Virus record (IMG/VR): IMGVR_UViG_3300024502_000010
Coordinates: 1-64,000 of that record
DNA: 64,000 nucleotides
Direction: 5' to 3' (one strand)
A model generated the notes under the pieces. That model searched no databases. It saw only the letters and a program-made list of their open reading frames with translations, and was not told the DNA's origin. A program made the translations under genes and the position numbers. Below, piece after piece: positions 7,040 to 44,912 of this stretch (the first letter of the stretch is position 1; each line of letters starts with the position of its first letter).

Positions 7040-10000
7040 TTATCCTCCTAATGCGAGTATGAATGGTGTCATTGTAGAAAATAAACTTCTTGTATAAGAT
7101 GCACCACTGATTGTTCCTGTTTGTTGATTAATAACAACTCCATCACCAATTCTAAAATTGCCAGATTGATCGGTAGTAGTATAAACAACCAATCCGCCAT
7201 TTCTAGAATCAGTTTCATTTTGTTGAATAGGAACACCACCATTTCTAGGAAGAGCTGTTGCAATGTCAACACCAGAACCAATATATTCTAGAGAATGACC
7301 AGAAGCTAAAACACGACTTTGTTTGAAGAAATTAACTTCACTGCCAACACCAACTACATAAGGAATTGTATCATTAACAGTAATAGTACAGATTCCACTT
7401 GAAATTGGAGTCGAACTCAATACTGCATAATATACAGGAGAAATAATTGCCGATCCTATGGCTGTATTTATTCCTGCATTTGGGGAGCTAAAAGTAACTT
7501 TTGGTGCAACAGTATATCCCCTACCTTCGGAAATAATATCAACTGAAGAAATTGATCCATTTGTAATTTGCACAGATGCAGTCGCTGGTATGCCCCAGTC
7601 AGACTCTGGTGGATCAATAGTTACTATTGCAGGTCCAGTATATCCACTACCTCCAGATGATATACCAATACCTTTTATTGTATAATATAATCTATCAAAA
7701 TAAATTACTTGACCATCGAATGGTCTTACAATACTGATATTTACTGTTCCTGTATTTGAAATATGAGCATGTGGAAGAGTAGAAACTCCAACATAAACAC
7801 TAAATGTGGTGCTTGCCATAGAAACCGCTGGCAAAGCGTTTGCTCCATTTATATTTCCTGCATTTAGGCGAGTTGTGATAATACCAACAAGATTGTCTAT
7901 GAATGACTGTACATCGGCACATGATGATGGACTTGTATTGATGCCTGTAAGAGGATCTGCAATGATTGATAAATCCTTATTTGTTAAATTATTAGTAATC
8001 GCAAGTTTCATTAATTCTCTTGCAGAAGTAAACCCAACAATTGTCTGAGGAACTTCTCCATCAACACCATGTGTTAAAATTGATCCATCTAATTTAAAAT
8101 ACGCTTTAGTAGCATCTAAAGTATTTTTACTTGTATAATCTCTAACATCAATCGATACTGCATCTACAATATATCCAATATCTCTTTTGCACTTATCTGG
8201 GCTTGGATTTGTGAAGTCAGTATATGCAACTCCTATGGCGTTATATGCCAAATCAACAATTTCTTGACGATTTGATTGAATCAAATTATATGCATCATAG
8301 TATCTACCGGGAGCAACAGAAACGGTATTGAATGTATACCCATTTCTTCCAGAAGGATATGTGACTATTCCGGGACCTGAAGGGCAATTAAATTCCAAAC
8401 CATGTAAAGATACTCCCATTCCAACTGAAAACTTATGGGGAATATTTGTAGTTGCAGTTAATATTCCAGTGGTATTATCATATCTTGCAGAAACTATACC
8501 TAAAATTGGAGAATTCAAATTAACTACGAATGTACTTGAATTTGCTGAAGATTGTTCAGTAACAATTCCAGTATAACTCTTACTACCTACACCATCAGCA
8601 ACAAGACCATAATTACCGAATGAAGCATTTGAGTTTGTTAAATCACATGCTCCACCAGATCCGCAATAGACAGCTATGTCATTGCATATAGTAAACAATG
8701 ATACCAACTGGGCATATCCACCATTAGTAATAGAAACTCCAATACCATTTTGATTGTATTGTGTAAAGGAATCTGTAACCATACTCTTAAATGGACCAAG
8801 AACATGGTTACCATCAATCTTCATTCCAATACTGTTGACAATAAAATTAGTACAGTTCCTAATATAAGGAGATTGGCTTGAAAAACCTATCTGGTTTGGA
8901 TTAAATGCAAATACTGCTTTTCCTTTATTTAAAGAACCAGTATATGAAATTTCAGTCACATAATTTCCTTCAGAAACATGGAATAAATCTTGGTCTGGAT
9001 TTAGTGGAGATACTGATACCTCTCTCAAACTATCTCCAGTAATTGAAACTTGTTTTTTAAGGACTAGTGGATTATTTTCTACATAATGTCCAGAAGTAAC
9101 CTTAATAACTGTTCCAGTTGTTGCTACTGTGAGAGCTGCTCCAATTGTTCTTTTTGCATCTCCGAGTTTGAGTCCTGTGTTTGTGTCGTTTCCATCTGAG
9201 GTTACATATAAAATACTTGTTACTTGAGTACCAAGAATTCCCGAAATACCCTGAGCACCTTGTATACCATGAGCTCCCTGAGCTCCTGCATTTCCAGATC
9301 TTCCCTGAGAACCTTGAGAACCTTGAATGCCTTGAGAACCTTGTATTCCAAATCCAGTATTTCCTTGAACGCCTTGAGTACCTTGGACACCTTGACCAGC
9401 AAATTCTCCGGGTAATCCTTGAGATCCTTGAATGCCAAATCCAATAATACCTTGAGATCCAATACTTCCCTGTACACCTTGTCCAGCAAATTGTCCGGAA
9501 ATTCCTTGTGGTCCTATAGGTCCAATAGAACCGATATCACCGACAGATCCTTGAATTCCTTGCCCCTCAAAACCTTGAATTCCTTGTGCTCCAATTTCAC
9601 CCTGAATACCTATTAACCCCTGAGAACCTTGAGTACCTTGCCCCGCAAATTCTCCGGGGATACCTTGAGAACCCTGAGAACCACTAAACCCAGCAGACCC
9701 CTGGGCTCCTTGGCCAGCAAATTCTCCGGGGATACCTTGAGAACCCTGAACACCTGTAGATCCAAGAATTCCTTGAGCACCCTGAGAACCCGATAATCCA
9801 GAAGAACCTTGAGCCCCCTGTCCAACAAATTCTCCAGATATTCCTTGAAGACCCTGAAGACCTCTTTCACCTCTAGCTCCTTGAGAACCTTCAAAACCTT
9901 GAGAACCTTGAAGACCCTGAATTCCTTGGTTTCCAGAAGAACCTTGAACTCCAGTTCCCACTCTACCTTGTGTTCCCTGAGTTCCTTGTCCAGCAAATTC

Positions 10001-12307
10001 TCCAGATATTCCTTGAAGACCTTGAAGACCTTGGGGACCTTGGAGACCTTGTGAACCTTGGGCACCTTGAGTTCCATCTAATCCTTGAATACCTTGAACA
10101 CCCTGAATGCCCTGAACTCCTTGTTCACCTCGGAGACCTTGTGTTCCTTGAGTTCCTTGTCCAGCAAATTCTCCGGATAATCCTTGGAGACCTTGGAGAC
10201 CCTGTAGACCCTGTAGACCTTGAATTCCACCTAAACCTTGAGCACCTTGGGCACCTTGGGCAACAAATTCTCCGGAGATACCCTGAGCTCCTTGCTCACC
10301 TTGTTCGCCCTGTTCACCAATAGATCCCTGAACTCCTTGTGATCCTGCAGGTCCCGGTGGACCTTCATTTCCAGGATCTCCTATATTACCTTGAACACCT
10401 TGAAATCCTTGAGAACCAACACTTCCCTGTACACCCTGTCCAGCAAATTGTCCAGATAATCCCTGAAGACCTTGAAGACCTTGAAGACCTTGAGTTCCTT
10501 GAACACCCTGAGACCCTTGAACACCTTGTCCAGCAAATTCTCCAGGTAATCCTTGAATACCTTGAGAACCTTGCGAACCATCGTATCCTTGAATTCCTAT
10601 TGCACCTTGAGTTCCTTGCCCAGCAAATTCTCCGGATAGTCCCTGAAGACCTTGAAGACCCACATCTCCCTGAGATCCCTGAGAACCTTGAGCACTTAAA
10701 CCACCCTGAATACCTTGGGCTCCTTGGAAACCTTGAGGACCAACTCCACCAAACCTACCTTGAGGACCTTGAGGACCTTGAGGACCATTTTCTCCTTGAA
10801 TACCTTGAATACCTTGAATACCTTGAATACCTTGAGGACCATCTGCCCCCTGAACACCTTGTCCAGCAAATTCTCCAGATAATCCTTGGAGACCTTGACT
10901 ACCTTGAGAACCACTAGTTCCTTGCAGACCTTGTATTCCTTGAGGACCAAAAATTCCCTGAAGACCTTGAGGACCTCTATCGCCAAAAGATCCCTGAATT
11001 CCTTGCAATCCAAATCCAGTATTACCTTGAACACCTTGAACACCTTGGGGTCCAAATCCTCTAATTCCTTGAGAACCTTGAGGTCCTTCGTCTCCCTGAA
11101 TACCTTGAGAACCCTGAGAACCTTGGGAACCTTGGGAACCAAGATCTCCTTTACTTCCCAATCTTCCTTGAACACCAATTAATCCCTGAGATCCTTGTGT
11201 TCCTATTGAACCTTGAGAACCTTGAGTACTTAATCCACCCTGAATACCCTGCGAACCTTGAAGTCCTTGTGTTCCTAATAATCCTTGAGAACCTTGAGCA
11301 CTCAATCCACCCTGAATACCCTGCGAACCCTGATAACCTAAAGAACCTTGAGCTCCTTGACCAGCAAATTCTCCAGATAGTCCTTGAAGACCTTGAGTTC
11401 CCGAAATTCCCTGAGAACCAGAACCCTGAATACCTTGTAAACCTTGAAAACCTATATCTCCCTGAATACCTTGAGATCCGAGATTACCTTGAACACCCAA
11501 ACTACCTTGAGTTCCAGTTCTTCCTTGAGAACCTTGGAAACCCTGAGAACCTAATAAACCCTGAAGACCCTGAGAACCTTGAAGACCCTGTAAACCTTGA
11601 ATACCTTGTTCTCCTTGAGTTCCTTGGGATCCTTGCTGACCTCGTAACCCTTGAATACCCTGAGAACCTAATAAACCCTGAAGACCCTGAAGACCCTGAA
11701 GACCCTGTAAACCTTGAAGACCCTGTAAACCTTGAACACCTTGAATTCCTTGGTCACCAAGTGGTCCCCTTAAACCTTGAGAACCTAAATTTCCTTGAGA
11801 ACCTTGTAAACCTTGAGTTCCTTGAAAACCATAATCACCTTGAATACCTTGGAGACCCTGTAATCCCTGAGATCCCTGAGACCCATTATTTCCTTGAGTA
11901 CCTCTTTGACCTTGAACACCTATAGAACCTTGTGTTCCTATATTACCCTGAATTCCCTGAATACCCTGGACGCCTTGTAGACCCTGCGCTCCATCAAATC
12001 CTTGTGGTCCAGATCTACCTTGTGTTCCTTGTAAACCTTGCGTTCCATTAGCACCTTGTACACCCTGTGCCCCATCAGACCCCTGTACTCCCTGAGCTCC
12101 ATCAGTGCCTTGTAGACCCTGAGAACCCTCAGTTCCTTGTACACCTTGTCCAGCAAATTCTCCAGATAATCCTTGAGAACCTTGAGAACCATCAAGTCCC
12201 TGAATCCCCTGAGAACCTTGAGTTCCTTGGGCTCCTTGGGCTGCGTAACCTTCCTGCGTTACAACGAAGTCTGAAGTATATCCTAAAGTGACATTATAAT
12301 CTGTCAT
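7040..12307 (-). CDS. Collagen-like (Gly-X-Gln) fibre protein with a C-terminal beta-helix-like domain (1755 aa)
   Basis: About 1000 aa of Gly-X-Y triplets with Y mostly Gln. These are followed by [14 protein letters not shown]...AKRTIGAAL, a typical start of a parallel beta-helix domain in cyanophage fibres. Confidence 0.85.
9230..12250 (-). repeat. Collagen Gly-X-Gln 9-bp/18-bp low-complexity repeat region
   Basis: Continuous accttgagaacc/ccttgaagacc-type repeats on the plus strand; these produce the many shadow ORFs in the track. Confidence 0.9.
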
Positions 12308-14163: not shown

Positions 14164-15573
14164 TTATGGCATTCCAAATGGGTTTCTCTCACTAAAGTCA
14201 ATTATTAAATCAGATTCCAATTCAATTTCAGAATTTTGTGCATATCCATCATCAATTGGATACTGATCAATAAAACGCAATTCGTGATAAGATCCAGAAT
14301 CTTCTCCTGTCACCATTTCTCCCGCAACAAATTCTCCGTTAATATTTGATAATTCTAAAACATTAGTAACAGAATTCCAAGATTTTACTCTTCCTTTTGT
14401 GCCACTATCAGATCCAACAACTACTTCGTTAAAGATATAGTTTCCATAAGAGGATGTTGACGCTGCTCCAATTATTATGGTTGGGGAAACGGTATATCCC
14501 AATCCGGCGTTTGTAATTCTTATCGATGTGATTGTTCCCGCAGAACTTACGACAGCAGTTGCGGCTGCAGAAACTGAAGAAATTCCACTGAAAGAAATAG
14601 TCGGCGGTGATGTATAACCAGATCCCCCATTAGTTAGAGTTATAATACCAACAACACCATTTCCAATTGTAGCTGTTGCTGTAGCACCACCACCTTCTTC
14701 ACTAATAAATCTTACTCCCGGAGACTGTGTATATCCAAATCCAGAATTTATTAATTGTACACTTTGAACTGATTTTGAATTTGGATTTGTATTGTCATTG
14801 CAAACAACAATACCGCCAATCATAATAGCTGTTGCTATACCAGTTTTTCCTCCAATTGGTGCTGAAGATATTCCAACTTTTGGCGCTGTTAGATACCCAC
14901 CACCTCTATTTGTTACAGTTATGTATCTTATACCACCATTTACTATATGTGCTGTTGCTGTAGCAGTTACTGCAGACCCAACCATGGTAAGCTTTTGAAT
15001 AGAACCAATTGAAGCATTTTCTCCATCAATACCAGTACCACTTATATTATCATCTATTTCCGCAATACCTGTATCAATGACTTCATCTTCATATCTAAAG
15101 ATTTCGCACCTTAATTCATAAGTATAGTTTTTTTGTAATTGATAAAATGGTTTTTCATGCTCAACATATTTAATTTCAAATAATCTATCTCCCAAAGGTA
15201 AATAAATTAAATCACCTTCTTTCGGTCTTGATGCTAATTTAATTCCGGGTCTGGATTTTATTAGTGGATATATGTAATTTTCATATCTTTCTTTTGAAAT
15301 TGTAATTGTTAATTCATTTAGTGCCTGTATACCAAATTTTGAAAGTATAGTTGGATTATTGCCATATCCATCATAATTTTCAATATAAGCTTCTATAGGA
15401 AAAGCCTGATTGAAAAGAGACTCTATTACTTCTTTTATTATTGTTCTTTCTGTCACATACTTTCTAGGTATATAATAAACTTCAACTCCATACATTCTAA
15501 GTTGTTCATTTATTAAATCTTGTATAAGACCCTGCTCAGATTTTGATCCTTGAAGAAAAAATGGATTAAGCAT
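14164..15573 (-). CDS. g14: Neck protein (T4 gp14-like) with a Gly-rich beta-repeat insertion
   Basis: LNPFF...EQ.LIQDLINEQLRMYG, PKEGDLIYLP and FEIKYVEHE.PFYQL motifs. Confidence 0.85.
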   Translation of the reverse strand: MLNPFFLQGSKSEQGLIQDLINEQLRMYGVEVYYIPRKYVTERTIIKEVIESLFNQAFPIEAYIENYDGYGNNPTILSKFGIQALNELTITISKERYENYIYPLIKSRPGIKLASRPKEGDLIYLPLGDRLFEIKYVEHEKPFYQLQKNYTYELRCEIFRYEDEVIDTGIAEIDDNISGTGIDGENASIGSIQKLTMVGSAVTATATAHIVNGGIRYITVTNRGGGYLTAPKVGISSAPIGGKTGIATAIMIGGIVVCNDNTNPNSKSVQSVQLINSGFGYTQSPGVRFISEEGGGATATATIGNGVVGIITLTNGGSGYTSPPTISFSGISSVSAAATAVVSSAGTITSIRITNAGLGYTVSPTIIIGAASTSSYGNYIFNEVVVGSDSGTKGRVKSWNSVTNVLELSNINGEFVAGEMVTGEDSGSYHELRFIDQYPIDDGYAQNSEIELESDLIIDFSERNPFGMP

Positions 15574-15577
15574 GAGA

Positions 15578-16423
15578 TTAACCTATCATATCTAAAGGTG
15601 GCAACTCATATGTATTTGACATTTTTTCCATTAAAATATCTATTTCTCTTTGAGCATCATCATACATTTGTCTGCCATTCAACTCAACACCACCGGGAAG
15701 TTTAACTCCAGTGAATTTCATCATATTCTGACCCCATTGTTTTTTAATCAAGGAGGTTAGATATGGTTTAAGGAAAGAGTCATTCCAAACTCTAGAATAA
15801 TCATTTGGATCGAGAGTTGAATAGCAATCAATTACAAAATACTGCCCCTCACTTACTGAACCCCAATCAATATCCAAATATAATCTATCTTGCCTTTTAT
15901 TAAAACGAATTTGTTTCTGTGTATTCAAAAGAAAATCCAAATCTTCCAAATAAGTTTTGACCATAGCATAAGAAAGTAGTTCAGTGGTCCCCCAGTAGTA
16001 AACATCATTTAAGAATAATTGATATTTTACGCTGAACATACTGTGGGTAATTGTATTTGCCCCATCAAAAGTAAAGATTTTATTTACACCAATAATATTA
16101 GGGGGAACTTGGAGATAATTGCTATTTTCATAATAATTAAAAGTAGTTGTTGTGCCAGCAATATTTGTCGTGGCGCTAATAGTCGTTATGCCCACATTTC
16201 CGGAAAGACCTTTAGCTCTTCCTCTATCAATGTCGTTCTGAGTTACTTTATACTTATAAAATGTTGGATAGACTCCATCAAAATGTCTTTCTTGAAAAAA
16301 CTGGATGGCATCATCAACTAAATCTTCAATTTGTTCATCTGCAACATTTATTTCCAAAACTGGCGCACCCAGTTTTCTTTTACAATAATCTATTAGTTCT
16401 TGTCTAGTAGATGGTTGCGCCAT
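15578..16423 (-). CDS. g13: Neck protein (T4 gp13-like)
   Basis: RQELIDYCKRKLGAPVLEINVA.EQ and KKQWGQNMMKF.GV.LPGGV.LNG motifs. Confidence 0.9.
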   Translation of the reverse strand: MAQPSTRQELIDYCKRKLGAPVLEINVADEQIEDLVDDAIQFFQERHFDGVYPTFYKYKVTQNDIDRGRAKGLSGNVGITTISATTNIAGTTTTFNYYENSNYLQVPPNIIGVNKIFTFDGANTITHSMFSVKYQLFLNDVYYWGTTELLSYAMVKTYLEDLDFLLNTQKQIRFNKRQDRLYLDIDWGSVSEGQYFVIDCYSTLDPNDYSRVWNDSFLKPYLTSLIKKQWGQNMMKFTGVKLPGGVELNGRQMYDDAQREIDILMEKMSNTYELPPLDMIG

Positions 16424-16444
16424 TTATCTTCTCTTTTAAAATAT

Positions 16445-16624
16445 TTATGATTTGGTTGTTAAAAGTTGAGATACAACTTCTTGCTGCTTTAAGTATAATT
16501 TAAAATAGCATTTTGCAATGTTTTTTGCATCTTCTATATTAGATATATTATCTATTTCTGAGCAAACTTTAAAATATTCAAAGCTTTTACTAAGATTTTC
16601 AAGTTCTATATTATCTGGATTCAT
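16445..16624 (-). CDS. 59-aa helical protein resembling NblA (phycobilisome degradation adaptor); not in the ORF track
   Basis: Manual translation MNPDNIELENLSKSFEYFKVCSEIDNISNIEDAKNIAKCYFKLYLKQQEVVSQLLTTKS; its start overlaps the 3' end of the upstream gene. The NblA resemblance is by eye only. Confidence 0.45.
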   Translation of the reverse strand: MNPDNIELENLSKSFEYFKVCSEIDNISNIEDAKNIAKCYFKLYLKQQEVVSQLLTTKS

Positions 16625-16838
16625 TTATCAAACCTCTAAGTAGCATTTTAATTTCATCTAAATCATTTTTTATACTCGATACTTCATGCTCCAAACTGTT
16701 AATTTTTTTCTGTTCTTCATTTTTTACATTACGTCTAGACAGATACTGTTGATATTCTGACATATTAGCATTAATAATCGAATTTGTTTTTGGGTCCCTA
16801 AAAAGGTCGTTTTGACCTTCTACTTTTAAGTAATTCAT
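16611..16838 (-). CDS. Conserved cyanophage hypothetical protein with C-terminal coiled coil (75 aa)
   Basis: LKVEG..DL.RDPKTNSIIN motif and a heptad C-terminus; packed into the late operon. Confidence 0.7.
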   Translation of the reverse strand: MNYLKVEGQNDLFRDPKTNSIINANMSEYQQYLSRRNVKNEEQKKINSLEHEVSSIKNDLDEIKMLLRGLINESR

Positions 16839-16846
16839 AATTTTTT

Positions 16847-19800
16847 TTATGCAAGTGAAATAACTCTTAGATTTTTAACTCTCGGTGGATACACTTGACT
16901 CGTTGATGTCATTACTAACTTAATTCTATAGAATCTAAATGAAGGTAGTTGATCTGCAGTGAATGTATATTCTCTAAAATCAACATTTGCAGATTCAAAT
17001 GCCAATGCTAAGGATGGTTGGACAAAAACATCAGGTAATCCATCACTGTCTTCAAGATTAATTACTTGTTTTGTTGTAACATCAATGTTATTGTATCCTG
17101 GGAATGGTGTAAATATTGGAGTAAAATTAGAAGTCTCACTTATTGCATAGAAAGCACGAATATCACAATAAGAATTGATGTGAGCATCTAATAGAATTTT
17201 AATTGATGATGCAGGATTTTCTAATGTAATTTCCTTTGATAGATATTGGAATGCAGATGGATCAACACCAACAGTATTTACTCTATTATCAGTTGCATAA
17301 TTTCCGATAACTTTATTAACTCTGTTTGAAGTTAAAACGGCTGTCATTCTTTGGGTATCAATAACTGGAGAGACCTTTGGATCGGAGGTACTCAAATTAA
17401 ATCTAATATTCAATGATTTTTTGCCAGGTAAGTCAACAATATTTTGTGTTTCGTTAGTTTTGGAAGCAATAATTCTTGGACTATTAAAATAATGAGTTTT
17501 ATTAATCGGAATAGTTTCAAAACCTTGATCCACATATGCAATTTCATTGCCACTAATACTAGAACCACTTATTGTTCTTATTTCGGCATCCAAACTAGTT
17601 CCCTGTACAGTTGTATTCTGAATACTTGTAGTAATTAATTCATAAGGAATATTTTGTGATGCCTTTATGTTAAATCCTCCCGCATTTTTTGTATTATTGA
17701 AATAAAGTGCTGGGAAAGATTGACCGTTACTTCTATCTGTACCTTCTTGATTCGATCTAATTTTAATAGAATATGAATCAAAAGTTATTGGATCTTTTAC
17801 TGAAGCATTGCCCAGATAATGCTCAGTATTAATTCTTCTTAGAGACACTCCATTAAGTTCATATTTGTAAACTGGAGTTCCTGCCAAATATTCTATGCTT
17901 CCACCTGGATATGAATTCAATACATTTTGATATACTGGATCGATATATCCAAAAGAAGTAATTCCACGAAGAGCACCACTGCTAACAGAAGTGTATTCTA
18001 AAAGTTGATTATCTATCAATACATATCCTGGATTTGTTGATGCGACACCAACATTTTCAAAAGTTGTAAAATTAGATGGATCGTCAATAAAAATACTATC
18101 CCCAGTTTGATATGGTATTGATAATTTTGTTGGTGGTACATCACTTTCAACGCCTGAAATATTAACATAGTTATTTTTAAAATACATACCATGATTTTTG
18201 TGATTTACAGTGAAGTGAAGACCATCTGTTTCAACATTAATATCATTTATTTGAACATTTCCACCATTTGAGTAATTTAATGCACTAGTTATTCCTGCAC
18301 TATTAATATAACTGACAGTTTTTCCTACTCCAGCAACTTCAAAATTACCCTGAACATTATCTAAAATAAGTTCATTAGTACTTGCTATTGATACTATAGA
18401 GAATGTTGCATTTCTTCCTATCGAATTCCCTCCAATTGTAGAAATTCCTAAGATATCTCCGACTTTGTAACCATTTCCAGATTGACTTATGGTTGCTGCA
18501 ACAGCAACTCCGCTACTAATTGTCACATCAGCCTTAGCATTTCTCCCACTTCCGGTAATTGTAACTAAAGATACATCATTGAAAGTGAGTGATCCTGCTG
18601 ACGGAGTATATCCGATTCCAGAATTGATAACCTCTAGTTGTCCTGTAGCTATTCCTGCACTTCCTACATAATTTCCGGATGCATTTGTTCCACCTTGAAC
18701 AATTGTATTACCTAAAACTAAATTAGCATCTGTTAATGATGAAGAAAGAGAAACTCTTATCTTTCTGGAATTCATTGAAATTGAGTTTGGCATTAATGTT
18801 GGAATTTGGGAATTTCCTATGCTCAATTCTGGATTATAAAATTCTACTCTTCCTTCCGGAACAAATTCTGCCCTATAAAGAGAAAACTTAAGATCTTCCC
18901 ATTGGCTAGCTTCCCAAGTTGATGCATTTTGGGACTTGAATAGAGAACCAAGTGTTGGTTGAGTGGAAACTGCGGATTGAGTTAAAATATCAACCTCACC
19001 AACACCAACTCTTGAAATAAAGACATTATATTTTGAAGAAGATGAACCAACAACAAGAGCGTATTCGGCTGGTCCAGTCAAGTAAACTGGAGCTTTAAAA
19101 GTAAATGTTGTTGCAACACTACCATCATTAGAAGTTTTTACTTCGTCTGGGCTTAAGAATACTTCAGAAAATGGTAGAACTTCTCTTGTAGGATAACCAT
19201 TTTGCATGGTTCTAATCTGAACAAAAACTGGCGTCTCAGCATCTTCTTTTGTCTTAAAGAAGATATCACACTTAGTAATAAAGACTCCCCCACTCTCATT
19301 AACTAAGAATGATTGTGCAAGAGGATCCCACCAATAGCATCTGTATCCATAATTTGTTGTGGAAGTAACTTGAGTATCTACCAATTGGGGCCCAGTTGTT
19401 TTGGATACTGCCTCTTGTTTGGTTTGTTGCTTTTGCTCAATTCTACCATTTCTTGTTGAAATGATATTTTCTTGAACGGTTTCCAAAGTTCCACTTGAAG
19501 TAAATGCTTCTTCAGCTAATGTAGCTGCAGTAGCTGCATTGTTTAAATTATTATTAATTAATGTAAAAGTTTTATTGCCATTTTCAAATCTTGGATTTGC
19601 TGATACATTTGGGTTGGGTAGATAGAAACTACCAATAATCCATGTGTATACATCAGTAAGCAATCTGACATTAGTAATTCTTGCCTGAGCACCACTTGTT
19701 TTTCCAACCAGTGTCATACCACTTTCTACATATCCGGAGTACTGTCCTTGATACTGTGCAGAAAGAGAGAATGTATCAACATTCAAAACTGTAGAAGTTG

Positions 19801-22800
19801 AAGAATAAGTTGATGGTAGGGGCTGACTTGTATATGGATTTAATGGGAAAACTGAAGATGGTGCATCATATTGACCGTCTTTATGATTAGACTGTGCAAC
19901 TCTAAATGTAATACTTGCAGTACTATCTGCTATAACTGTTGGACTTATACCAGTTTTAATAACAGTACCAACAACATCCTCTCCGACTTGGAAGACGCCG
20001 CTTATCATATTAATTTCAAGGAGTTTAGGTACACAATATTTTGTTACATCAATTCCATCGAAGAAAGCATATAGTTGTGTTAATGGTTTTAAGTTCTTAG
20101 AAACAAACTGAATGTTTCTAGACCTCATGTATTGAATAAGATTTCTACTTACTACCTTATCACCTATAGACTGTCTATCAAATTCCTCAACAACGAAGGT
20201 TGTTGTACCGGTGCTGCTCTTAACACCAGTTTCTTTTACTTCTCTATATTTGTCTTGAGTGACTGTAGTTGTTTGGCTATACCATCCACGATTATGCCAT
20301 CCGTAGTATCCCCAGTATCCGTAGTATCCCCAGTATCCATAATAATAACCATAAGGATAACCATACCAATAATACCCATAGTGTCCATAGTTTTGTGTTG
20401 TCTTACTGCTGGTTTGTACTGTTTCAATAACTTCCTTTCCAGTCCATGTTGTTTCCCATGCGCTCCAAACAGTGGGAGAATATCCAGTCTGAGGGTCTAC
20501 ATTAAACTGCTCTGCAGCAAGAGCCATAGTTTGGGCATAATTTCCTTCAACATTAATTGTTTTTGCATCTAAACGAACAGTATCGACCCAAGTATCGGAT
20601 GCTGGTGTTAATTCTGTAGTTCCTTGCCAAAAACTAATTACGAATGGAGTTACATTTTCAGTTCTTGTTGCAAATGGTTGTTTGAAATATTCAACCTCAG
20701 AATAATTTAGAGTAATTAAATCACTATTTTTTATGATATTAGAACCCTCTGGTTGCTCAACAGAATAATCGATAGAAGGATTTAATCCTTCTACGGGACC
20801 TTGAACCAAATCAATTGCAGTTGTGTAATGTCTTGGTCTTAGTTCTTTATTTTTTATATCAATACTATTTTGATATGGGAATCCACTTTCTTGTGATTGT
20901 AGAGTGCTAAAATTATCTACAAAAAATCCTGATTTAAAACGATCCAATCCTTCAGAATCTGCAACAAATAAATTCGCCGTGCTTGTTTCTAGCATTGAAA
21001 GCGCGGTGTAATACTCAAGATTCTTAATACGATTCTCAAGTTGTTTAATATCAACCATTCTATATCTTTTGTGCTCAAGAAGTTGAACAGTTGATTGCGA
21101 AACCGCAAATAGATATGGAGAATGTGTTACTGTTGCAATTTCTAATGAATCATCGACTGTAATTGGTTTTTCTGGTTTTTCTGAAGGAACTCCATACTGT
21201 ATTTGGAAAGTCCCATCTTTTCTTAAATATACTCTATCAATTCTTCCCAAGTAATAAGAGAATGATGTTATAATTTCTTCATCTGATGCTAAAATATTAG
21301 CAGAAGAATTTCCTGCAGCATTAAATACTCTTCCGTAGAATTCAAGAGGAGACCTTGAGTTTTGTGATACTGTATAATTAGACACTCTAGGTCTAATGTC
21401 AATCATATCACAATTTCTTATGGAGTTTGTTGTTTGGATATCTTTAACATAATCAAATCCACTATAGGATTCTATAGTTGTAATATCTCCAATATCAGAC
21501 TCTTGATGGTAACCACTAGAGTAATAAACTTTTATTTTATATACGGGTTCAGATGCCGAAGAATTCCTTGAAATATATCCATATCCATAGAAAGAACCAT
21601 TTTGCCCATTATCAAACTTATAACTTGAAGAGATATTCGAACTTGGAGAATCTATAGTTGTAATAACAGCTTGTATATTTGATTCTCTAAAAATTATTGG
21701 TTCCCCTTCTTTGAAATTAGTTTCATTTTCTGGTACAAATGTTATCTCAGAATCGGTCAATCTTTCGGTATATAAACCTATTGCACCACTAATTTGACCA
21801 ACAAATTGTTCGCCAATGATTAAATCTGTTGTTTTTGTTGTTGGTCCATTAATTGATGATAAAGTTGCCCTAGGTGCAGTTGGATCGCTGGTATCCTTGG
21901 ATTCATAAACAGCAATAACATTTAATACATCGGGAACATTTAATGATATTACATCATCTTGAACTCTTGTTCCATATGGATAATTTCCATAAATCAATCC
22001 ATCATTTAAAGTTGTAGTTCCTGTTCCAGAAGCTGCGTTCCTTGATTTATCTACAATATATACACCAACTCTATTTTTTAACTTATTTTTTGATTTTGGC
22101 TTTATTTTTCTGAGAGTTGTGACTAAAGTTGCTGCCGAATTTGTTCCCAAATTATAAATTTGAAGTTCTTTTGAACCATTTATAAAATCGAATTTATCTT
22201 CTGTTAAAACTTCAAAGGTTCCATCCTCTCTGACAAGAGTATAACGCTCTTCATCAAATGGTAGAAATGTCTCATTTTCTCCAGCAGCAACTGTGGATGA
22301 TAACTGATTTGATACTATGTTTACATCATATACCTTTCTTATTGTTAATGTTGTTTCTGATAAATTTATTGATGCAACATTTGGTCTTGGTAATACCGTA
22401 AATAAAGTATCATCGCTAGATCTTGAAAGTTTAGCTCCAAGTACTTTAAGATCAACTACTTCTAGTGTTGAATTTGGTAGTTTTCCTTCATTAGTTCCAA
22501 AAACAGTAGTAACTCCAGTTACTGATATTGAAGTTTTTCCTACACTAACTACACTTGCATAAACTGGATATGGAGAACTAAAATTACTAAATTCTACTAA
22601 ATTTCCTGGTTTAACTACTTTTCCTGGGAAATTTGGATTTGTGCTTATTATTGTACTAATTCCTAGTACATTTGCCGTACTTATAGTTGCTATACCAATA
22701 TTATAGTATGGGGATTGGATAACATTAGCATTGAAAGTTTTAGCAGTTCCTACTGTTCCTCTTATAGATTCAACATCGGAAATTGAATATGATGTTACTG

Positions 22801-24418
22801 CTATAGCTGTTCTTGTCTCCTCTATTCCATCAATTATAAGTGATTCATTGGGTATAAAATCACCATTCTTTTGATAAAGTACAATTGACCTACTATTATT
22901 AACAGAATCTTTTAGAAAAGCTGTTGCTCCGCTATTTGCCCCTGTAATAAAATTGGGAGTTGAAAGTGTAATCGGTTGGTTTAGGGTAATTTCTGTTGTT
23001 GTCTGTACATCATATAGTGATATTGTCCATTGATTTAAATTTGGATTTAGGCTGTCATATGAGCCAGATTCTAATTTAAAATCATAGACTCTAGCTACAC
23101 CAATTTCTTTTCCGGCAGCATCTGTAGATGCAGTCCCAATTCTACTATCTCTTAGACTTACAATATAAGTATTCCCAATTCCTACTATTGGAGAACCATA
23201 AACTCTATTCAGCGAAAGAGTTGATCCGGTATTATAATTAACAGCAATATTTTCTAAAGTTTTTGTATCTCTTGGTTTAGGAACATCTAAAAATGTTGTT
23301 GAAATAGTCTCAACTTCATATCCCTTGACAAAAGCTTTACCTGGAGAAATTTGATATAAAGCTAAACTTTCTGACGGAATTGATCCCCCATAAGTAAACT
23401 GACCTGCATTAAATATTCCACCATTTCCAAGATTGTCATTCAAAGATTCTTTAACACTTAAATCAAAAGGAGTTACATAATAGTCACCAGATTCTGCATA
23501 AGTTCTTCTTGCAAGTTCATCTGCAATTAATGAATATTCCTTGGTTACCCTGTTGGTTTTTAAGATACCATTTTCGATTGAAGCTAGTTCTACGAAATTA
23601 TTGTCGGAATAATCGTTTAAAGATTTTTTGAATAAAGATACTGTTATTTTTAATCTATCAGCTCCGGGAGAAGAGTAATTATTATAACCTTGAGAATTAT
23701 CATTTAGAGATTCATCTACATCTGAGGTAACAATTTCTTCATTAATATACAAACCAACTCTATAACTTGGAGTGTTTGTATATTGATCTAATATTAATGT
23801 CTCAGTATTAACTGTGATAAAATGACCACGAATAAAGTATACTCCTTCACTAATTGAAAATGAAGATCCCACAGAGCTAGCTCCGCTAGAAACCGTTGAT
23901 GCAAAAGGAGATCCTTCAGAAATTGTACTGTTTGACAGTAATCCAGATTGTATCGTTGTAGTTGTTATTAAATTTTCCCCATCTAAAAATTCTGTAGTAG
24001 AATTATTAATTAAACTTGATGAGATATAATTTACATATAATGTTGTATTTCCCCTTTCAGATTGAGTTGAAGGTAAAACCTTATCAATTGTTGCTGTTAT
24101 ACCAGAAGTCTCTCCAATAATTTTTGTTCCAACTAATTGATCTATATAAGCTTCTACGGGAACTCCAAGAAAAGAATTGTTTAGTCGGACAGCATAATAA
24201 GACTGATTATAAGAAATATTTCCCGGTATTACTTTTGCACCTTCTTTAAAAAAATGTTGTCCAAATTTTTCAATTTGATTTTGTAAAGTTGATTGTAGAG
24301 TTGTTAACTCTCTAGCTTGAACAGGATACCCTGGCTTAAAAAGAACTTTATAATAATCTTTATTTGCATCAAAATCATCAAAATATGGTGCAACATTGAG
24401 ATTTGTTTCTTGTGACAT
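16847..24418 (-). CDS. Large virion/baseplate-associated protein, VrlC/DUF4815-like (2523 aa)
   Basis: N-terminus TNLNVAPYFDDFD..KDYYKVLFKPGYPVQARELTTLQ; later IKQLE.RIKNLEYYT.LS.LE, DRFKSGFFVDNF and DPLAQSF motifs. Confidence 0.8.
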   Translation of the reverse strand: MSQETNLNVAPYFDDFDANKDYYKVLFKPGYPVQARELTTLQSTLQNQIEKFGQHFFKEGAKVIPGNISYNQSYYAVRLNNSFLGVPVEAYIDQLVGTKIIGETSGITATIDKVLPSTQSERGNTTLYVNYISSSLINNSTTEFLDGENLITTTTIQSGLLSNSTISEGSPFASTVSSGASSVGSSFSISEGVYFIRGHFITVNTETLILDQYTNTPSYRVGLYINEEIVTSDVDESLNDNSQGYNNYSSPGADRLKITVSLFKKSLNDYSDNNFVELASIENGILKTNRVTKEYSLIADELARRTYAESGDYYVTPFDLSVKESLNDNLGNGGIFNAGQFTYGGSIPSESLALYQISPGKAFVKGYEVETISTTFLDVPKPRDTKTLENIAVNYNTGSTLSLNRVYGSPIVGIGNTYIVSLRDSRIGTASTDAAGKEIGVARVYDFKLESGSYDSLNPNLNQWTISLYDVQTTTEITLNQPITLSTPNFITGANSGATAFLKDSVNNSRSIVLYQKNGDFIPNESLIIDGIEETRTAIAVTSYSISDVESIRGTVGTAKTFNANVIQSPYYNIGIATISTANVLGISTIISTNPNFPGKVVKPGNLVEFSNFSSPYPVYASVVSVGKTSISVTGVTTVFGTNEGKLPNSTLEVVDLKVLGAKLSRSSDDTLFTVLPRPNVASINLSETTLTIRKVYDVNIVSNQLSSTVAAGENETFLPFDEERYTLVREDGTFEVLTEDKFDFINGSKELQIYNLGTNSAATLVTTLRKIKPKSKNKLKNRVGVYIVDKSRNAASGTGTTTLNDGLIYGNYPYGTRVQDDVISLNVPDVLNVIAVYESKDTSDPTAPRATLSSINGPTTKTTDLIIGEQFVGQISGAIGLYTERLTDSEITFVPENETNFKEGEPIIFRESNIQAVITTIDSPSSNISSSYKFDNGQNGSFYGYGYISRNSSASEPVYKIKVYYSSGYHQESDIGDITTIESYSGFDYVKDIQTTNSIRNCDMIDIRPRVSNYTVSQNSRSPLEFYGRVFNAAGNSSANILASDEEIITSFSYYLGRIDRVYLRKDGTFQIQYGVPSEKPEKPITVDDSLEIATVTHSPYLFAVSQSTVQLLEHKRYRMVDIKQLENRIKNLEYYTALSMLETSTANLFVADSEGLDRFKSGFFVDNFSTLQSQESGFPYQNSIDIKNKELRPRHYTTAIDLVQGPVEGLNPSIDYSVEQPEGSNIIKNSDLITLNYSEVEYFKQPFATRTENVTPFVISFWQGTTELTPASDTWVDTVRLDAKTINVEGNYAQTMALAAEQFNVDPQTGYSPTVWSAWETTWTGKEVIETVQTSSKTTQNYGHYGYYWYGYPYGYYYGYWGYYGYWGYYGWHNRGWYSQTTTVTQDKYREVKETGVKSSTGTTTFVVEEFDRQSIGDKVVSRNLIQYMRSRNIQFVSKNLKPLTQLYAFFDGIDVTKYCVPKLLEINMISGVFQVGEDVVGTVIKTGISPTVIADSTASITFRVAQSNHKDGQYDAPSSVFPLNPYTSQPLPSTYSSTSTVLNVDTFSLSAQYQGQYSGYVESGMTLVGKTSGAQARITNVRLLTDVYTWIIGSFYLPNPNVSANPRFENGNKTFTLINNNLNNAATAATLAEEAFTSSGTLETVQENIISTRNGRIEQKQQTKQEAVSKTTGPQLVDTQVTSTTNYGYRCYWWDPLAQSFLVNESGGVFITKCDIFFKTKEDAETPVFVQIRTMQNGYPTREVLPFSEVFLSPDEVKTSNDGSVATTFTFKAPVYLTGPAEYALVVGSSSSKYNVFISRVGVGEVDILTQSAVSTQPTLGSLFKSQNASTWEASQWEDLKFSLYRAEFVPEGRVEFYNPELSIGNSQIPTLMPNSISMNSRKIRVSLSSSLTDANLVLGNTIVQGGTNASGNYVGSAGIATGQLEVINSGIGYTPSAGSLTFNDVSLVTITGSGRNAKADVTISSGVAVAATISQSGNGYKVGDILGISTIGGNSIGRNATFSIVSIASTNELILDNVQGNFEVAGVGKTVSYINSAGITSALNYSNGGNVQINDINVETDGLHFTVNHKNHGMYFKNNYVNISGVESDVPPTKLSIPYQTGDSIFIDDPSNFTTFENVGVASTNPGYVLIDNQLLEYTSVSSGALRGITSFGYIDPVYQNVLNSYPGGSIEYLAGTPVYKYELNGVSLRRINTEHYLGNASVKDPITFDSYSIKIRSNQEGTDRSNGQSFPALYFNNTKNAGGFNIKASQNIPYELITTSIQNTTVQGTSLDAEIRTISGSSISGNEIAYVDQGFETIPINKTHYFNSPRIIASKTNETQNIVDLPGKKSLNIRFNLSTSDPKVSPVIDTQRMTAVLTSNRVNKVIGNYATDNRVNTVGVDPSAFQYLSKEITLENPASSIKILLDAHINSYCDIRAFYAISETSNFTPIFTPFPGYNNIDVTTKQVINLEDSDGLPDVFVQPSLALAFESANVDFREYTFTADQLPSFRFYRIKLVMTSTSQVYPPRVKNLRVISLA

Positions 24419-26029: not shown

Positions 26030-29000
26030 CTATGGATTTTTATATTGAGAATACTTTAATGGATTTTTTCTTTTTAAAATAGTTCCAGTAGAGATGCCCG
26101 AATATCCATTTAATGTATATGCATTAAATGCACTTTCCTTTTGTCTGTAATCTAGAATAACTCTTCCCCAACTAAAATCTCCATAATAATCACTAATTCC
26201 AATTCCAGATAGTCCGTTTAAGTTGTCCACACTCACAGTAACTCTTGCAATGTATGTTGTTCCCACTCCGATTATAGAAGATTGCTCTATTGAAACATCA
26301 ACTGCCTTATAAACACCATCCAAAAATGTAGTTGCTATTCCGACAATATTTGAACTCTCATCCAATGATGTAAGTCCATTTCCAATATTTGAATTTGAAA
26401 CTACGAAATAATAATCAGTTTTTATTTGACTCACGGTTGTAAGTCCTGTTATTTTGCTGTTTCTCAATGGTGAGTTTATTGGAATCATAAAATCAAATAT
26501 TATTCCAGTTGAAGCAACTCCGACAGAAGTAGTCGCAATTCCAGTTATTACTCCAAAATCTCCTCCATATGATAAAACTTTAGTAGATTCTATTTTAATA
26601 ATTGGTGGTTCTATCAATACTAATGGTGGATTTTCTTGAGAATATCCTGTAGTAACTCCAGTTACAATGATAGAAGTCACTATTCCAGAACTAATATAAG
26701 AAACACAAGTAGTAGTTGTGGAAGCAATTCCTACCGGACTTTGAACAACTACTGATGGTGCTTCAGTGTACCCAAATCCACCGTCAGTAATAACAATTGA
26801 AGAAACAGTTCCTGCTGACGATACAACTGCAGTAGCAGTAGCTGAAGCAACTTGATCTTGGGAAATCAAGTAAATATCTTTTTGAAATTCTAAGGAAGAT
26901 ACATTTTCATTTATTGGATTGAAAAATGGTCTACAATTGTCAACAAAAATAAGAGTGGATCCAACACCAACTGAACTTATGATATTTGCCGATGGATGTA
27001 TCAAAGGCTCATATAGAATTCTATCCTTTCCAATTTGCTTTTGATTAATTATTTTGTCCTTGGTTTGTTTATACCAAGATATCGGTCTGTTTAGATTTTC
27101 GATATTAGTGTTACCTGGACCAAAATAAGGATTAGTTTCTATTAAATCAACAGTTTTAATGTCTAAAACTGTTCTTCTATCCTCAAGTAAGAATGGGTTT
27201 TGTCCGGCAGAATAATCATACTCAAGTCTGACCTCATCTCCCATTTTAACTGTTTCTATTATGTTCCTAAAAGGAACATCTATTTCCCCACTTCCCTTAT
27301 AGAAAAGAATTTTACAAACATCATCTTCTTTAGGGGGCTCAACAAATCTAATTACACTTCCACCATCAAATATATAAGATTTCTGTGGAACTTGAAGAAT
27401 ATTATTTAAAAATACCAATAAGTTATCTCTTATATTGATAAGAGATCCTTTACCTGCTAAAATTGAAATCGATTGTCCTTGATATATTAATGGGAAAACA
27501 GTTCTTTCTCCTGTAAAAAGTATATCAATAGAATCTAATAACTGCAATTCTCCAATAGACCAAGCAGTAAATTTATCAGTAAAAGTTCTTTGAACTTCTA
27601 TTTGAAACTCTTCAAATTGCGATCCTTGTACTGTTGGTATTCCAACTATTGAATTAGTTGAAACTGTTAAGATATCTCCAGATTTGTATCCATAACCCAG
27701 ATTCTTTATCTCAAAATCAACTACACTTGATCCCTGACCAACAACAATATCAATCGTTGCTTGTGTACCAACACCAGAAGAAGATGGACTATAAACTAAA
27801 GGTAAATCTGAGTATGAAAGTGGAGAATCAAAAATAACAAAGGGGGGATTTGAACGAGTATATCCAATTCCCGGATTAGTAATTGCAACACTAACAATGT
27901 TTCCTTTACTTACTGCAGCTGTTCCAATAAATTGAATGCTTCTAGAATTTAAAGAAGATGTTGAAACCCCTACTCTAACCTGAACATCTCTAGTTCCAAA
28001 GGAATTTTGAATTTTTTGTCTATATCCAGACCCACTGTTTCCTATACTAATTGCTTGGATAGTTCCTGCATCCGAAACAATTGCTGTTCCTCCAGCGGAA
28101 ACTAATGGTTGATATCCAAATCCTGATGTTGAACCGACAGAAACTATAATACCACCCGCAGGCAATCCAGATGTATTAATATCAGAAGCCAATGAAGTTC
28201 CTGCTCCAATAAATCTTATAGAAGTAAATCCAACATTTTCTTCTTCTAAGACATAAGAAGCAATATCGCCAGGTTCTTGGAAAATATCATTAATTATAAC
28301 TATAGCATTTTCTACAGAAACTCCAGAAACATTCTCTGCATTCGATGTTAAACTAAATGTATTTTTTTTGCCGTCAAACTGATTTGAAATATCATCGTAA
28401 AGATAATTTTTATAGTATGTGTCTTGATTTGAACCTGTTGCACCAGACCTCATAAAAATTCTTCCGTAGAAAGTGGAATTGGTTTGTATATTTTCCCAAT
28501 CCCTTTCATCTGGTGGATTTGTTGGTGTTCCTATTGGAACTCTTCCGTATGGAGCTTCAACGAAATGAATTTGATTTTGTACAATATTATAATTCCCAGT
28601 TACTTTAACAACTTTTGTTAAAGATTCATGTTCTTCTACTTTGGTGCCCAACCAAGGTCTATTTACTCTTACTGCGTTTGTTGACCCAACACCAACAGAC
28701 TCGACCCTCATAACCTCATCATCAATCCTTAATAAATCTCCACTAAAAATATTTGTAGTATTGTGGACATATAAAACATCTTCAGATATAAGATTCTTGG
28801 TAGAAAGAATTGTTGTAGTTGCTGTGGCAACTAGTGGAGACTGAATAAGATTGTCTAGAGTAATTAATCCTTTAGAATTTTGATTTGCTGCAGTGAAAGT
28901 ATGATTGGTTCCAATACCAAGAGAAGTTAAATTTAATATTTCAGGTATAAATTTAAGTGCGCTACTAGCACTCTTCGCCAATCTAATTCTATTTTGGTCT

Positions 29001-44852: not shown

Positions 44853-44912
44853 CTAATATCATTATTTCAGCACTTAAATATAAATAACGCAAGTACATTT
44901 TTCATCAATTCA

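What the first reader, a model, noticed from the sequence alone, without database searches (positions are those of the whole stretch)
16445..16624. Unannotated 59-aa NblA-like gene inside the late structural operon
Seen: a short ORF below the track's length cut-off, overlapping the upstream gene's end. By eye, IEL...F.......I.NIS..EDAK.....Y.......V.QLL parallels cyanobacterial NblA (IEL....F.......V.NMS..QAK....LY.........ELL). Established: NblA targets phycobiliproteins to Clp degradation, and viral nblA genes are known. Inference: a divergent late-expressed NblA that could strip host antennae.
Basis: partly seen in the sequence, partly recalled or inferred. Interest (0 to 1): 0.6.

Follow-up and report, generated by a model that had tools for sequence, protein, structure and literature searches.

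The report
Divergent NblA-like gene in cyanophage
The 59-codon ORF is a real, conserved cyanophage gene whose product is a divergent relative of NblA, the adaptor that sends cyanobacterial light-harvesting antennae to the Clp protease, but relatives in other cyanomyoviruses were already called nblA in print, so it is a new member of a known kind.

Summary
The ORF is real. It lies on the minus strand at 16445-16624 and encodes 59 aa. AGAGG sits 8 nt before the ATG. The start lies 14 nt inside the upstream gene's end. pN is 0.11 against pS 0.75. It belongs to a family of 729 protein clusters. Plain HMM tests against NblA all fail: Pfam PF04485 finds nothing, and family profiles do not hit the NblA chains in the PDB. 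Three deeper tests agree on NblA. (1) Profile-profile comparison: the phage family matches small multi-copy ORFs of picocyanobacteria (98.7%, E 2.6e-16). Those match canonical NblA (95.4%, E 1.7e-8). The phage family matches canonical NblA directly at 52% (E 1.4e-4, full length, z 8.5 against shuffles). (2) An AlphaFold model (pLDDT 90.8) compared with 48,161 PDB chains ranks the NblA crystal structures 1st, 2nd and 7th (1OJH: Z 6.3, 1.5 A over 52/52). (3) A homodimer prediction passes (0.51 against 0.00). It is not new as a kind: homologues in S-TIM5 and S-SCSM1 were already published as putative nblA. Late expression is inferred from position only, and function is untested. The phage is an uncultured T4-like cyanomyovirus from riverine samples.

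The parts
16445..16624 (-). 59-codon ORF (with stop) encoding the NblA-like protein P0001
   Evidence: Searches give the ORF and its translation. It matches phrog_27081 at E 7.3e-26. It is the only copy in the 204,829-bp viral record. pN 0.11 against pS 0.75.
16633..16637 (-). Shine-Dalgarno-like AGAGG, 8 nt upstream of the ATG at 16624
   Evidence: Read directly from the minus-strand sequence.
16550..16594 (-). Codons 11-25: predicted helix 1. Corresponds to NblA helix 1 and holds the retained Phe15.
   Evidence: AF2 model m05e6c5fe79c1, pLDDT 90.8; hhalign register.
16454..16537 (-). Codons 30-57: predicted long helix 2. Core of the predicted symmetric dimer interface (residues 30, 33, 37, 40, 44).
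16611..16838 (-). Context: upstream 75-aa virion structural protein gene, whose end overlaps the ORF start by 14 nt
   Evidence: phrog_473, E 8.7e-25. Same neighbour in S-SM2, Bellamy and uncultured relatives.
15578..16423 (-). Context: downstream gp13 neck protein (head-tail adaptor Ad2), starting 21 nt after the ORF stop
   Evidence: phrog_211, E 7.5e-49. 72% identical to gp13 of SynMITS9220M01 and 70% to S-SM2.
16847..24418 (-). Context: 2523-aa VrlC-like/DUF4815 structural protein at the head of the same gene string
   Evidence: The homologous gene is annotated VrlC in S-SM2 and carries DUF4815 in relatives.

Best explanation
The ORF encodes a divergent NblA. It is a 59-residue helix-loop-helix protein that pairs into a symmetric homodimer. 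It is of the type that picocyanobacteria (Synechococcus, Cyanobium, low-light Prochlorococcus) carry in one to several copies, and it was captured by a clade of T4-like cyanomyoviruses. By analogy with characterised NblAs, the dimer would bridge phycobiliproteins and the ClpC chaperone. The host ClpC-ClpP3/R protease would then dismantle the antenna during infection and release amino acids for virion synthesis. In this phage clade the gene is fixed between a small virion-protein gene and gp13, with an overlapping start and no room for its own promoter. It is therefore most likely made together with the late neck and virion genes. Shown here: that it is a coding gene, its homology chain, the predicted fold match and the predicted dimer. 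Inferred: the binding partners, phycobilisome degradation and the timing.
For: Real gene. Host counterparts: the family profile finds small ORFs in 147 of 201 picocyanobacterial genomes, 1-6 per genome, against 5 weak hits in 121 genomes across the wider phylum. This matches the published multi-copy, sequence-divergent nblA genes of marine Synechococcus (PMC12695635). Profile-profile comparisons: phage family vs picocyanobacterial ORFs 98.7%, E 2.6e-16. Picocyanobacterial vs canonical NblA 92-95.4%, E 6.6e-7 to 1.7e-8. Phage family vs a diverse canonical NblA alignment 52%, E 1.4e-4, 56 colinear columns. Controls: 150-200 column shuffles reach at most 16.7-19.5, against observed scores of 27.2 and 44.5; reversed canonical profiles give 9-13. 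One of 17 picocyanobacterial ORFs hits PF04485 directly at E 2.4e-4. Structure: model pLDDT 90.8. NblA chains 1ojh_A (Z 6.3, rmsd 1.5 A, 52/52), 2q8v_A (Z 5.9) and 3cs5_A (Z 4.9, rmsd 1.3 A, 48/48) rank 1, 2 and 7 of 48,161, and only 5 chains reach Z 5. Dimer: ipSAE 0.51 against best control 0.00. That mark was reached by 20 of 30 proteins solved as pairs of one chain and 1 of 23 solved as single chains. Runs agree in at least 77% of contacts and partner pLDDT is at least 70; the counts hold only roughly because my own alignment was used. A natural tandem fusion of two units also exists (P0204). Other workers reached the same call by HHpred for homologues that are 50-52% identical (PMC9602691; 10.1101/494369). 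A T7-like cyanophage NblA has been shown to direct phycobilisome degradation (PMC12695635).
Against: Pfam PF04485 finds nothing in the ORF at E<=10. It finds nothing in six frames of the whole viral record, in five phage homologues, or in any of 85 diverse family members at E<=1. HMM profiles of the family do not hit the NblA chains in the PDB. Foldseek finds nothing, and a poorer model (pLDDT 72) did not bring NblA into the top 50. All structural Z scores are below 8, which for helical hairpins can reflect a common arrangement. With the narrower canonical alignment the direct link had only 14.8% probability, and one reversed-profile control reached a score of 19.6. In the canonical LSLEQQF motif only the Leu and the Phe are kept (Glu and Gln become Ser12 and Lys13). 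At the C-terminus the Leu is kept (Leu54), but the Lys that aligns with Nostoc Lys53 is Thr56. No binding, degradation or expression-timing data exist for this subfamily. Metatranscriptome contigs cover the gene only as 8-28 kb pieces, which do not prove transcription.
Confidence: 0.72

Rival explanations
1. It is an NblA-derived protein whose job has shifted. It may direct ClpC to substrates other than phycobiliproteins. Alternatively it may pair with the host's own NblA paralogues as a heterodimer that boosts, redirects or blocks them.
For: The Glu-Gln of the canonical N-terminal motif and the C-terminal Lys are not kept. Hosts carry 1-6 paralogues with which it could pair. NblA1/NblA2 heterodimers are known in Synechocystis (cited in PMC7966870). 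The T7-like phage NblA also leads to cleavage of many non-phycobilisome proteins, and nblA occurs in Prochlorococcus that lack phycobilisomes (PMC12695635). Some relatives are fused to an unknown domain, phrog_3426.
Against: All 23 cultured-phage records that carry the family infect phycobilisome-bearing Synechococcus. The homodimer prediction passes on its own. Nothing here points to a specific alternative substrate.
Confidence: 0.18
2. It is a small structural or assembly factor of the neck and virion module (for example a chaperone or scaffold), and its resemblance to NblA is only the common helical-hairpin shape.
For: In 75 of the 80 closest viral contigs it lies between a virion-protein gene and gp13, with translational overlap. 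HMM-level tests for NblA fail.
Against: In S-TIM5, S-SKS1, S-B05, S-SCSM1 and S-SCSM2R the same family lies at unrelated, non-equivalent places. It also occurs in multiple copies in host chromosomes, which a virion part would not. The profile links to NblA exceed all controls. All three NblA structures rank in the top 7 of 48,161 chains.
Confidence: 0.07
3. It is not a gene: a chance open frame in AT-rich DNA (36% G+C) between two real genes.
For: Many spurious ORFs of 30-70 codons are listed in the same region.
Against: phrog_27081 at E 7.3e-26. 729 clusters with invariant positions. pN/pS is about 0.15 with saturated synonymous sites. An SD-like site lies at the right distance. Synteny is conserved.
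Confidence: 0.01

Closest known systems
Putative NblA of cyanomyoviruses: S-SCSM1 ORF237 (QFG06501.1), S-SCSM2R_118, S-TIM5 gp189 and homologues in S-SM2, Bellamy and S-SKS1 (phrog_27081)
   Same: Same family: 39-58% identity over more than 80% of the length, same length and same conserved core. In S-SM2 and Bellamy the genome slot is also the same (VrlC, 75-aa gene, this ORF, gp13). These were predicted to be nblA by HHpred or profile work (PMC9602691; 10.1101/494369).
   Different: This copy is from an uncultured riverine phage. It has no near-identical cultured relative and belongs to a sub-clade 67-93% identical to it that is abundant in IMG/VR. None of these homologues has been tested experimentally.
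Picocyanobacterial NblA paralogues (marine and freshwater Synechococcus/Cyanobium; low-light Prochlorococcus)
   Same: This is the closest cellular kin: hhalign 98.7%, E 2.6e-16. They share the F-E-x-E-[KR]...R-x-I-D...D-[VI]-x-x-L...A-K core and a loop that hhalign aligns to canonical NblA with a one-residue gap. The literature describes them as divergent in sequence while preserving the dimeric NblA architecture.
   Different: The host copies are chromosomal and number 1-6 per genome. The phage copy has its own conserved C-terminal K-L-Y-L-K-Q-Q-E motif.
Canonical NblA (Pfam PF04485; Nostoc PCC 7120 1OJH, T. vulcanus 2Q8V, S. elongatus 3CS5)
   Same: Similar size; helix-loop-helix fold superposable at 1.3-1.5 A over the whole chain; predicted dimer; colinear profile alignment over 56 columns.
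   Different: About 14% identity. It is not detected by the Pfam HMM. The hhalign alignment places extra residues before helix 1 and in the loop. The Glu-Gln of LSLEQQF and the C-terminal Lys are not kept.
NblA of T7-like cyanophages (S-TIP37; PMC12695635)
   Same: A phage-borne NblA in phages of picocyanobacteria. It is the only marine viral NblA with shown function: pigment loss, shorter latent period and phycobilisome cleavage.
   Different: According to that paper, the T7-like NblAs resemble canonical NblA more than the host paralogues do, lie next to the exonuclease gene and are expressed with DNA-replication genes. The present family is host-type and sits in the virion and neck gene string.
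NblA of freshwater myoviruses Ma-LMM01 and MaMV-DC
   Same: A myovirus-borne nblA.
   Different: It is canonical: PF04485 at E 1.1e-13. It lies between the nrdA and nrdB region genes and was recently acquired from Microcystis-like hosts.

Membership tests
NblA in the broad sense (including the divergent picocyanobacterial and cyanophage NblAs of Nadel et al. 2019/2025) | Single-domain protein of about 55-65 residues | tested here: met
   59 aa. Family members are mostly 54-64 aa.
NblA in the broad sense | Helix-loop-helix fold like the NblA crystal structures | tested here: met
   Model pLDDT 90.8 with helices 11-25 and 30-57. 1ojh_A Z 6.3, rmsd 1.5 A over 52/52; 2q8v_A Z 5.9; 3cs5_A Z 4.9, rmsd 1.3 A over 48/48. 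These rank 1, 2 and 7 of 48,161 chains. Caveats: the structure is a prediction, all Z are below 8, and Foldseek found nothing.
NblA in the broad sense | Functional unit is a dimer (four-helix bundle) | tested here: met
   In silico only. Score 0.51 against best control 0.00; runs agree in at least 77% of contacts; partner pLDDT at least 70. The mark was reached by 20/30 proteins solved as pairs of one chain and 1/23 solved as single chains; the counts are rough because my own alignment was used. A natural two-unit tandem fusion, P0204, exists. The geometry was not compared with the 1OJH dimer.
NblA in the broad sense | Detectable homology to canonical NblA at profile level | tested here: met
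   Direct comparison: 52%, E 1.4e-4, score 27.2, against a shuffle maximum of 16.7 (z 8.5). Through the picocyanobacterial ORFs: 98.7%, then 95.4% (z 17.8).
NblA in the broad sense | Occurs in phycobilisome-bearing cyanobacteria or their phages | tested here: met
   All 23 phage records infect Synechococcus. Host-type copies occur in 147 of 201 picocyanobacterial genomes. The record carries psbA and psbD.
NblA in the broad sense | Conserved motif residues (N-terminal L-S-L-E-Q-Q-F; C-terminal Leu and Lys) | tested here: inconclusive
   The register keeps Leu8, Phe15 and Leu54. Glu/Gln become Ser12/Lys13, and the Lys position is Thr56. That Leu51 and Lys53 of the Nostoc protein matter for binding is recalled from Bienert et al. 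2006 and was not re-read here.
NblA in the broad sense | Binds phycobiliproteins and ClpC and triggers phycobilisome degradation | not testable with these tools
   Needs expression, pull-down and spectroscopy.
Pfam PF04485 (NblA as currently modelled) | Score at or above the gathering threshold (25 bits) against the PF04485 HMM | tested here: not met
   No hit at E<=10 for the ORF. None in six frames of the record. 0 of 85 family members at E<=1. Positive control: Ma-LMM01 NblA at E 1.1e-13. The ORF is therefore not filed under PF04485 as such. Nadel et al. also report that marine cyanophage NblAs score poorly against this model.
phrog_27081 (phage protein family, function unknown) | Full-length HMM match | tested here: met
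   E 7.3e-26, residues 1-54 on profile positions 1-54 of 59.

The most novel reading that the evidence does not exclude
This clade of T4-like cyanophages has fixed a host-type (picocyanobacterial) NblA inside the neck and virion gene string. It would then be made late, together with the structural proteins. That would make it an acquisition separate from the NblA of T7-like cyanophages, with different timing (that one is expressed with replication genes). It might work by pairing with the host's own NblA paralogues, or on a different substrate set.
Probability: 0.3. Interest if true: 0.5.

Novelty: new member of a known kind. Interest (0 to 1): 0.3.

Why it matters
Viral NblA has recently been shown to cut oceanic cyanobacterial light harvesting and to speed infection, but only for T7-like podoviruses. 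T4-like cyanomyoviruses are at least as abundant. This work shows that a whole clade of them, here from river water, carries a host-type NblA that standard annotation (Pfam) misses. It occurs in hundreds of metagenomic variants and is fixed in the virion gene string. If it is active, antenna liquidation by phages is broader in lineage, habitat (fresh and estuarine water) and timing than the tested case shows. The practical lesson is that PF04485 under-detects this branch. The alignments built here (phage family, picocyanobacterial ORFs) would recover it.

Tried and rejected
Approaches that gave nothing or were uninformative:
- Pfam hmmscan of the ORF, five phage homologues and 85 family members: no NblA hit.
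- Six-frame PF04485 scan of the whole viral record: nothing.
- phmmer and hmmsearch of the protein and of two family profiles against PDB sequences: only chance hits, no NblA.
- Foldseek against the PDB with both models: nothing.
- VIA-align with the first, poorer model (pLDDT 72): only generic hairpins in the top 50, NblA not among them. The result changed only with the deeper alignment.
- Language-model look-alikes: the nearest named cluster is NblA, but at 0.76, which is a lead only.
- The search for related loci with a Ma-LMM01-type NblA alignment in genome contigs: no relatives. I reached host genomes through the record's psbA instead.
- Promoter and terminator scan: promoter-like sites occur at chance frequency, so nothing can be said about timing. 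The T4 late motif TATAAATA occurs only twice in the window, neither copy near the ORF, and fewer than chance expects.
- Metatranscriptomes: 14 RNA libraries hold the stretch, but as 8-28 kb contigs identical to the window. This cannot show transcription, strand or level.
- cpeT and bilin-reductase genes: not found in the record.
- phrog_3426, the fusion partner seen in two relatives: not found in this record.
- The idea that the ~134-aa representatives are fusions with the upstream 75-aa gene was rejected. One is a tandem duplication; two are fusions to phrog_3426.

The large representative search was used because the family scans left the protein open.

Full report
THE OBSERVATION. The ORF exists as described, on the minus strand: ATG at 16624, TAA at 16447-16445, 59 codons. 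On that strand AGAGG lies 8 nt before the ATG. The ATG lies 14 nt inside the end of the upstream 75-aa gene (16611-16838), and the stop is 21 nt before the start of gp13. All neighbours run the same way: a 2523-aa VrlC-like protein, the 75-aa virion protein (phrog_473), this ORF, then gp13, gp14, gp15 and the small terminase subunit. This is the virion and neck gene string of a T4-like cyanomyovirus.

IS IT A GENE? Yes.
- It matches phrog_27081 end to end (E 7.3e-26).
- The word search finds 729 protein clusters, and the exhaustive profile search finds 165 representatives at 50% clustering.
- The N-terminus (M1, P3, I6, L8) is invariant among close relatives, which fixes the start codon.
- Against a relative that is 78% identical in protein, non-synonymous sites differ at 0.11 while synonymous sites are saturated at 0.75. 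The pattern is the same kind as in the flanking gp13.
- It is the only copy in the 204,829-bp viral record.

THE PHAGE. No cultured phage is close at the DNA level. By gp13, the nearest are SynMITS9220M01 (72%), S-SM2 (70%), S-SKS1, Bellamy and S-SCSM1, which are the same cyanomyoviruses that carry this small gene. The record also has psbA and psbD. The DNA occurs in riverine metagenomes, so the host is probably a fresh- or estuarine-water picocyanobacterium.

SIMPLE TESTS FOR NblA FAIL.
- Pfam's NblA model (PF04485) finds nothing in the ORF even at E<=10.
- It finds nothing in six frames of the whole record, in five cultured-phage homologues, or in any of 85 diverse family members.
- The same model scores the Ma-LMM01 NblA at E 1.1e-13, which serves as the positive control.
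- HMMs of the family do not reach the NblA chains in the PDB, and Foldseek is blank.
If the work had stopped here, the claim would have looked refuted.

HOST COUNTERPARTS. I reached cyanobacterial genomes through the record's psbA. The family profile (A2) finds small ORFs in 147 of 201 genomes of the picocyanobacterial family, one to six per genome, with per-genome E-values down to 1e-9. Across a sample of the wider phylum it gives only 5 weak hits in 121 genomes, most of them with internal stops. The literature describes exactly this: several sequence-divergent nblA genes per marine Synechococcus genome, one in low-light Prochlorococcus, and a predicted dimeric architecture that is preserved (PMC12695635). 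The Synechococcus genomes G001 and G002 have no PF04485 match at E<=0.01, although A2 finds six ORFs in G001. Pfam therefore misses the host branch as well. One of 17 such ORFs does reach PF04485, at E 2.4e-4.

PROFILE-PROFILE TESTS WITH CONTROLS. I built canonical NblA alignments from PF04485 hits in 40 of 121 cyanobacterial genomes.
- Phage family vs picocyanobacterial ORFs: 98.7%, E 2.6e-16.
- Picocyanobacterial ORFs vs canonical NblA: 92%, rising to 95.4%, E 1.7e-8, with the more diverse canonical set.
- Phage family vs canonical NblA directly: 14.8% with the narrow set, and 52%, E 1.4e-4, colinear over 56 columns, with the diverse set.
- Controls: 150 column shuffles of the canonical alignment reach at most 16.7 against an observed 27.2 (z 8.5), and at most 15.8 against an observed 44.5 (z 17.8). 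Reversed profiles give 10-13.
- One earlier reversed-profile control reached 19.6. For that reason I rely on the chain and on the improved direct score, not on the first direct score.

STRUCTURE. With only close relatives in the alignment the model was mediocre (pLDDT 72), and an exhaustive structural search returned only generic hairpins. With the 85-sequence alignment the model is confident (pLDDT 90.8; helices 11-25 and 30-57). Against 48,161 PDB representatives only five chains reach Z 5. The NblA structures rank 1st (1OJH: Z 6.3, rmsd 1.5 A, 52 of 52 residues), 2nd (2Q8V: Z 5.9) and 7th (3CS5: Z 4.9, rmsd 1.3 A, 48 of 48). The absolute Z values are modest, as they must be for about 50 residues. 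The evidence is that all three NblA entries sit at the top. The alignment used for folding contained no canonical NblA.

DIMER. A two-copy prediction passes: score 0.51 against 0.00 for the best of three controls. That mark was reached by 20 of 30 proteins solved as pairs of one chain and 1 of 23 solved as single chains. The runs agree in at least 77% of contacts and the partner pLDDT is at least 70. The counts hold only roughly because my own alignment was used. The interface is symmetric and centred on helix 2. One natural relative is a tandem fusion of two units in one chain, which fits a dimeric working unit.

WHERE THE GENE SITS. In S-SM2, Bellamy and uncultured relatives the slot is the same as here. 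In the 80 closest IMG/VR contigs, 75 show the order 75-aa gene, this ORF, gp13; the ORF and gp13 are directly adjacent in 51 contigs and separated by one gene in 25. In S-TIM5, S-SKS1, S-B05, S-SCSM1 and S-SCSM2R the family lies in other, unrelated places. A gene that moves between slots and also lives in host chromosomes is an acquired host gene, not a virion part. Within this clade, however, it is fixed in the late gene string.

MECHANISM. Characterised NblAs are helix-loop-helix dimers of about 60 aa. They bind phycobiliproteins and ClpC and so deliver the antenna to the Clp protease (PMC7966870). A T7-like cyanophage NblA causes pigment loss, phycobilisome cleavage and a shorter latent period (PMC12695635). 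I propose the same mode of action here, with production alongside the structural genes. The binding partners, the degradation and the timing are all inferences. Promoter scans are uninformative, and the metatranscriptome contigs cannot show transcription. The partial loss of canonical motif residues leaves room for a changed substrate range or for pairing with host paralogues.

NOVELTY. Nadel et al. predicted nblA in S-TIM5 (10.1101/494369; as summarised in PMC9602691). The S-SCSM1 paper (PMC9602691) predicted ORF237 and seven myovirus homologues to be distant NblAs by HHpred and placed them with the picocyanobacterial genes. Two GenBank records carry the name. This ORF is 50-52% identical to those proteins. 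It is therefore a new member of a known kind. What this work adds is independent, controlled support for the family's assignment, the riverine habitat, and the quantified fixation of the gene in the neck operon.

Noticed in passing
window 54493-56048 (minus strand): An N4/N6 DNA methylase (PF01555, E 4e-57) and an MvaI/BcnI-family restriction endonuclease (PF15515, E 7e-39) are adjacent, with a 4-nt overlap. This looks like a complete type II restriction-modification pair inside a cyanomyovirus.
   Followed up: no
window 62267-63118 (minus) and 44913-45926 (plus): A Dam-like D12 adenine methyltransferase, and a GIY-YIG homing-type endonuclease on the strand opposite to its neighbours. One of the two TATAAATA motifs in the window lies just upstream of the endonuclease, at 44879.
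   Followed up: no
window 7040-12307 and 26030-38110 (minus strand): A 1755-aa protein made largely of collagen-like G-x-Q triplet repeats, and a 4026-aa giant ORF, both in the structural region.
   Followed up: no
proteins P0204, P0225, P0246 (relatives): P0204 is a tandem fusion of two NblA-like units. P0225 and P0246 fuse the unit, in opposite orders, to the same ~70-aa domain of unknown function (phrog_3426, E 2.7e-10 and 1.2e-8). This may be a functional partner, or the result of merged gene calls. The domain is not found in this viral record.
   Followed up: partly
window 15000-18000: Fourteen riverine metatranscriptome libraries hold this stretch at 100% of the sampled words. Four were laid, and each covers the stretch with one 8-28 kb contig identical to the window. 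This means either DNA carry-over or very heavy phage transcription in those samples; the data cannot tell which.
   Followed up: partly
genomes G001 and G002 (Synechococcus; loci L024, L042) and in general: Pfam PF04485 misses the picocyanobacterial NblA paralogues: 0 hits at E<=0.01 where the phage-family profile finds up to six ORFs per genome. Standard annotation therefore under-counts nblA in these hosts as well as in their phages.
   Followed up: partly
locus L005 3001-3165 (S-SKS1) and locus L008 3001-3156 (S-B05): In S-SKS1 the annotated CDS over the homologue is 137 aa (locus 2764-3177), and in S-B05 it is 67 aa (2992-3195). Both are longer than the conserved 54-59-aa unit, so the start codons in those records may be called too far upstream.
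   Followed up: no
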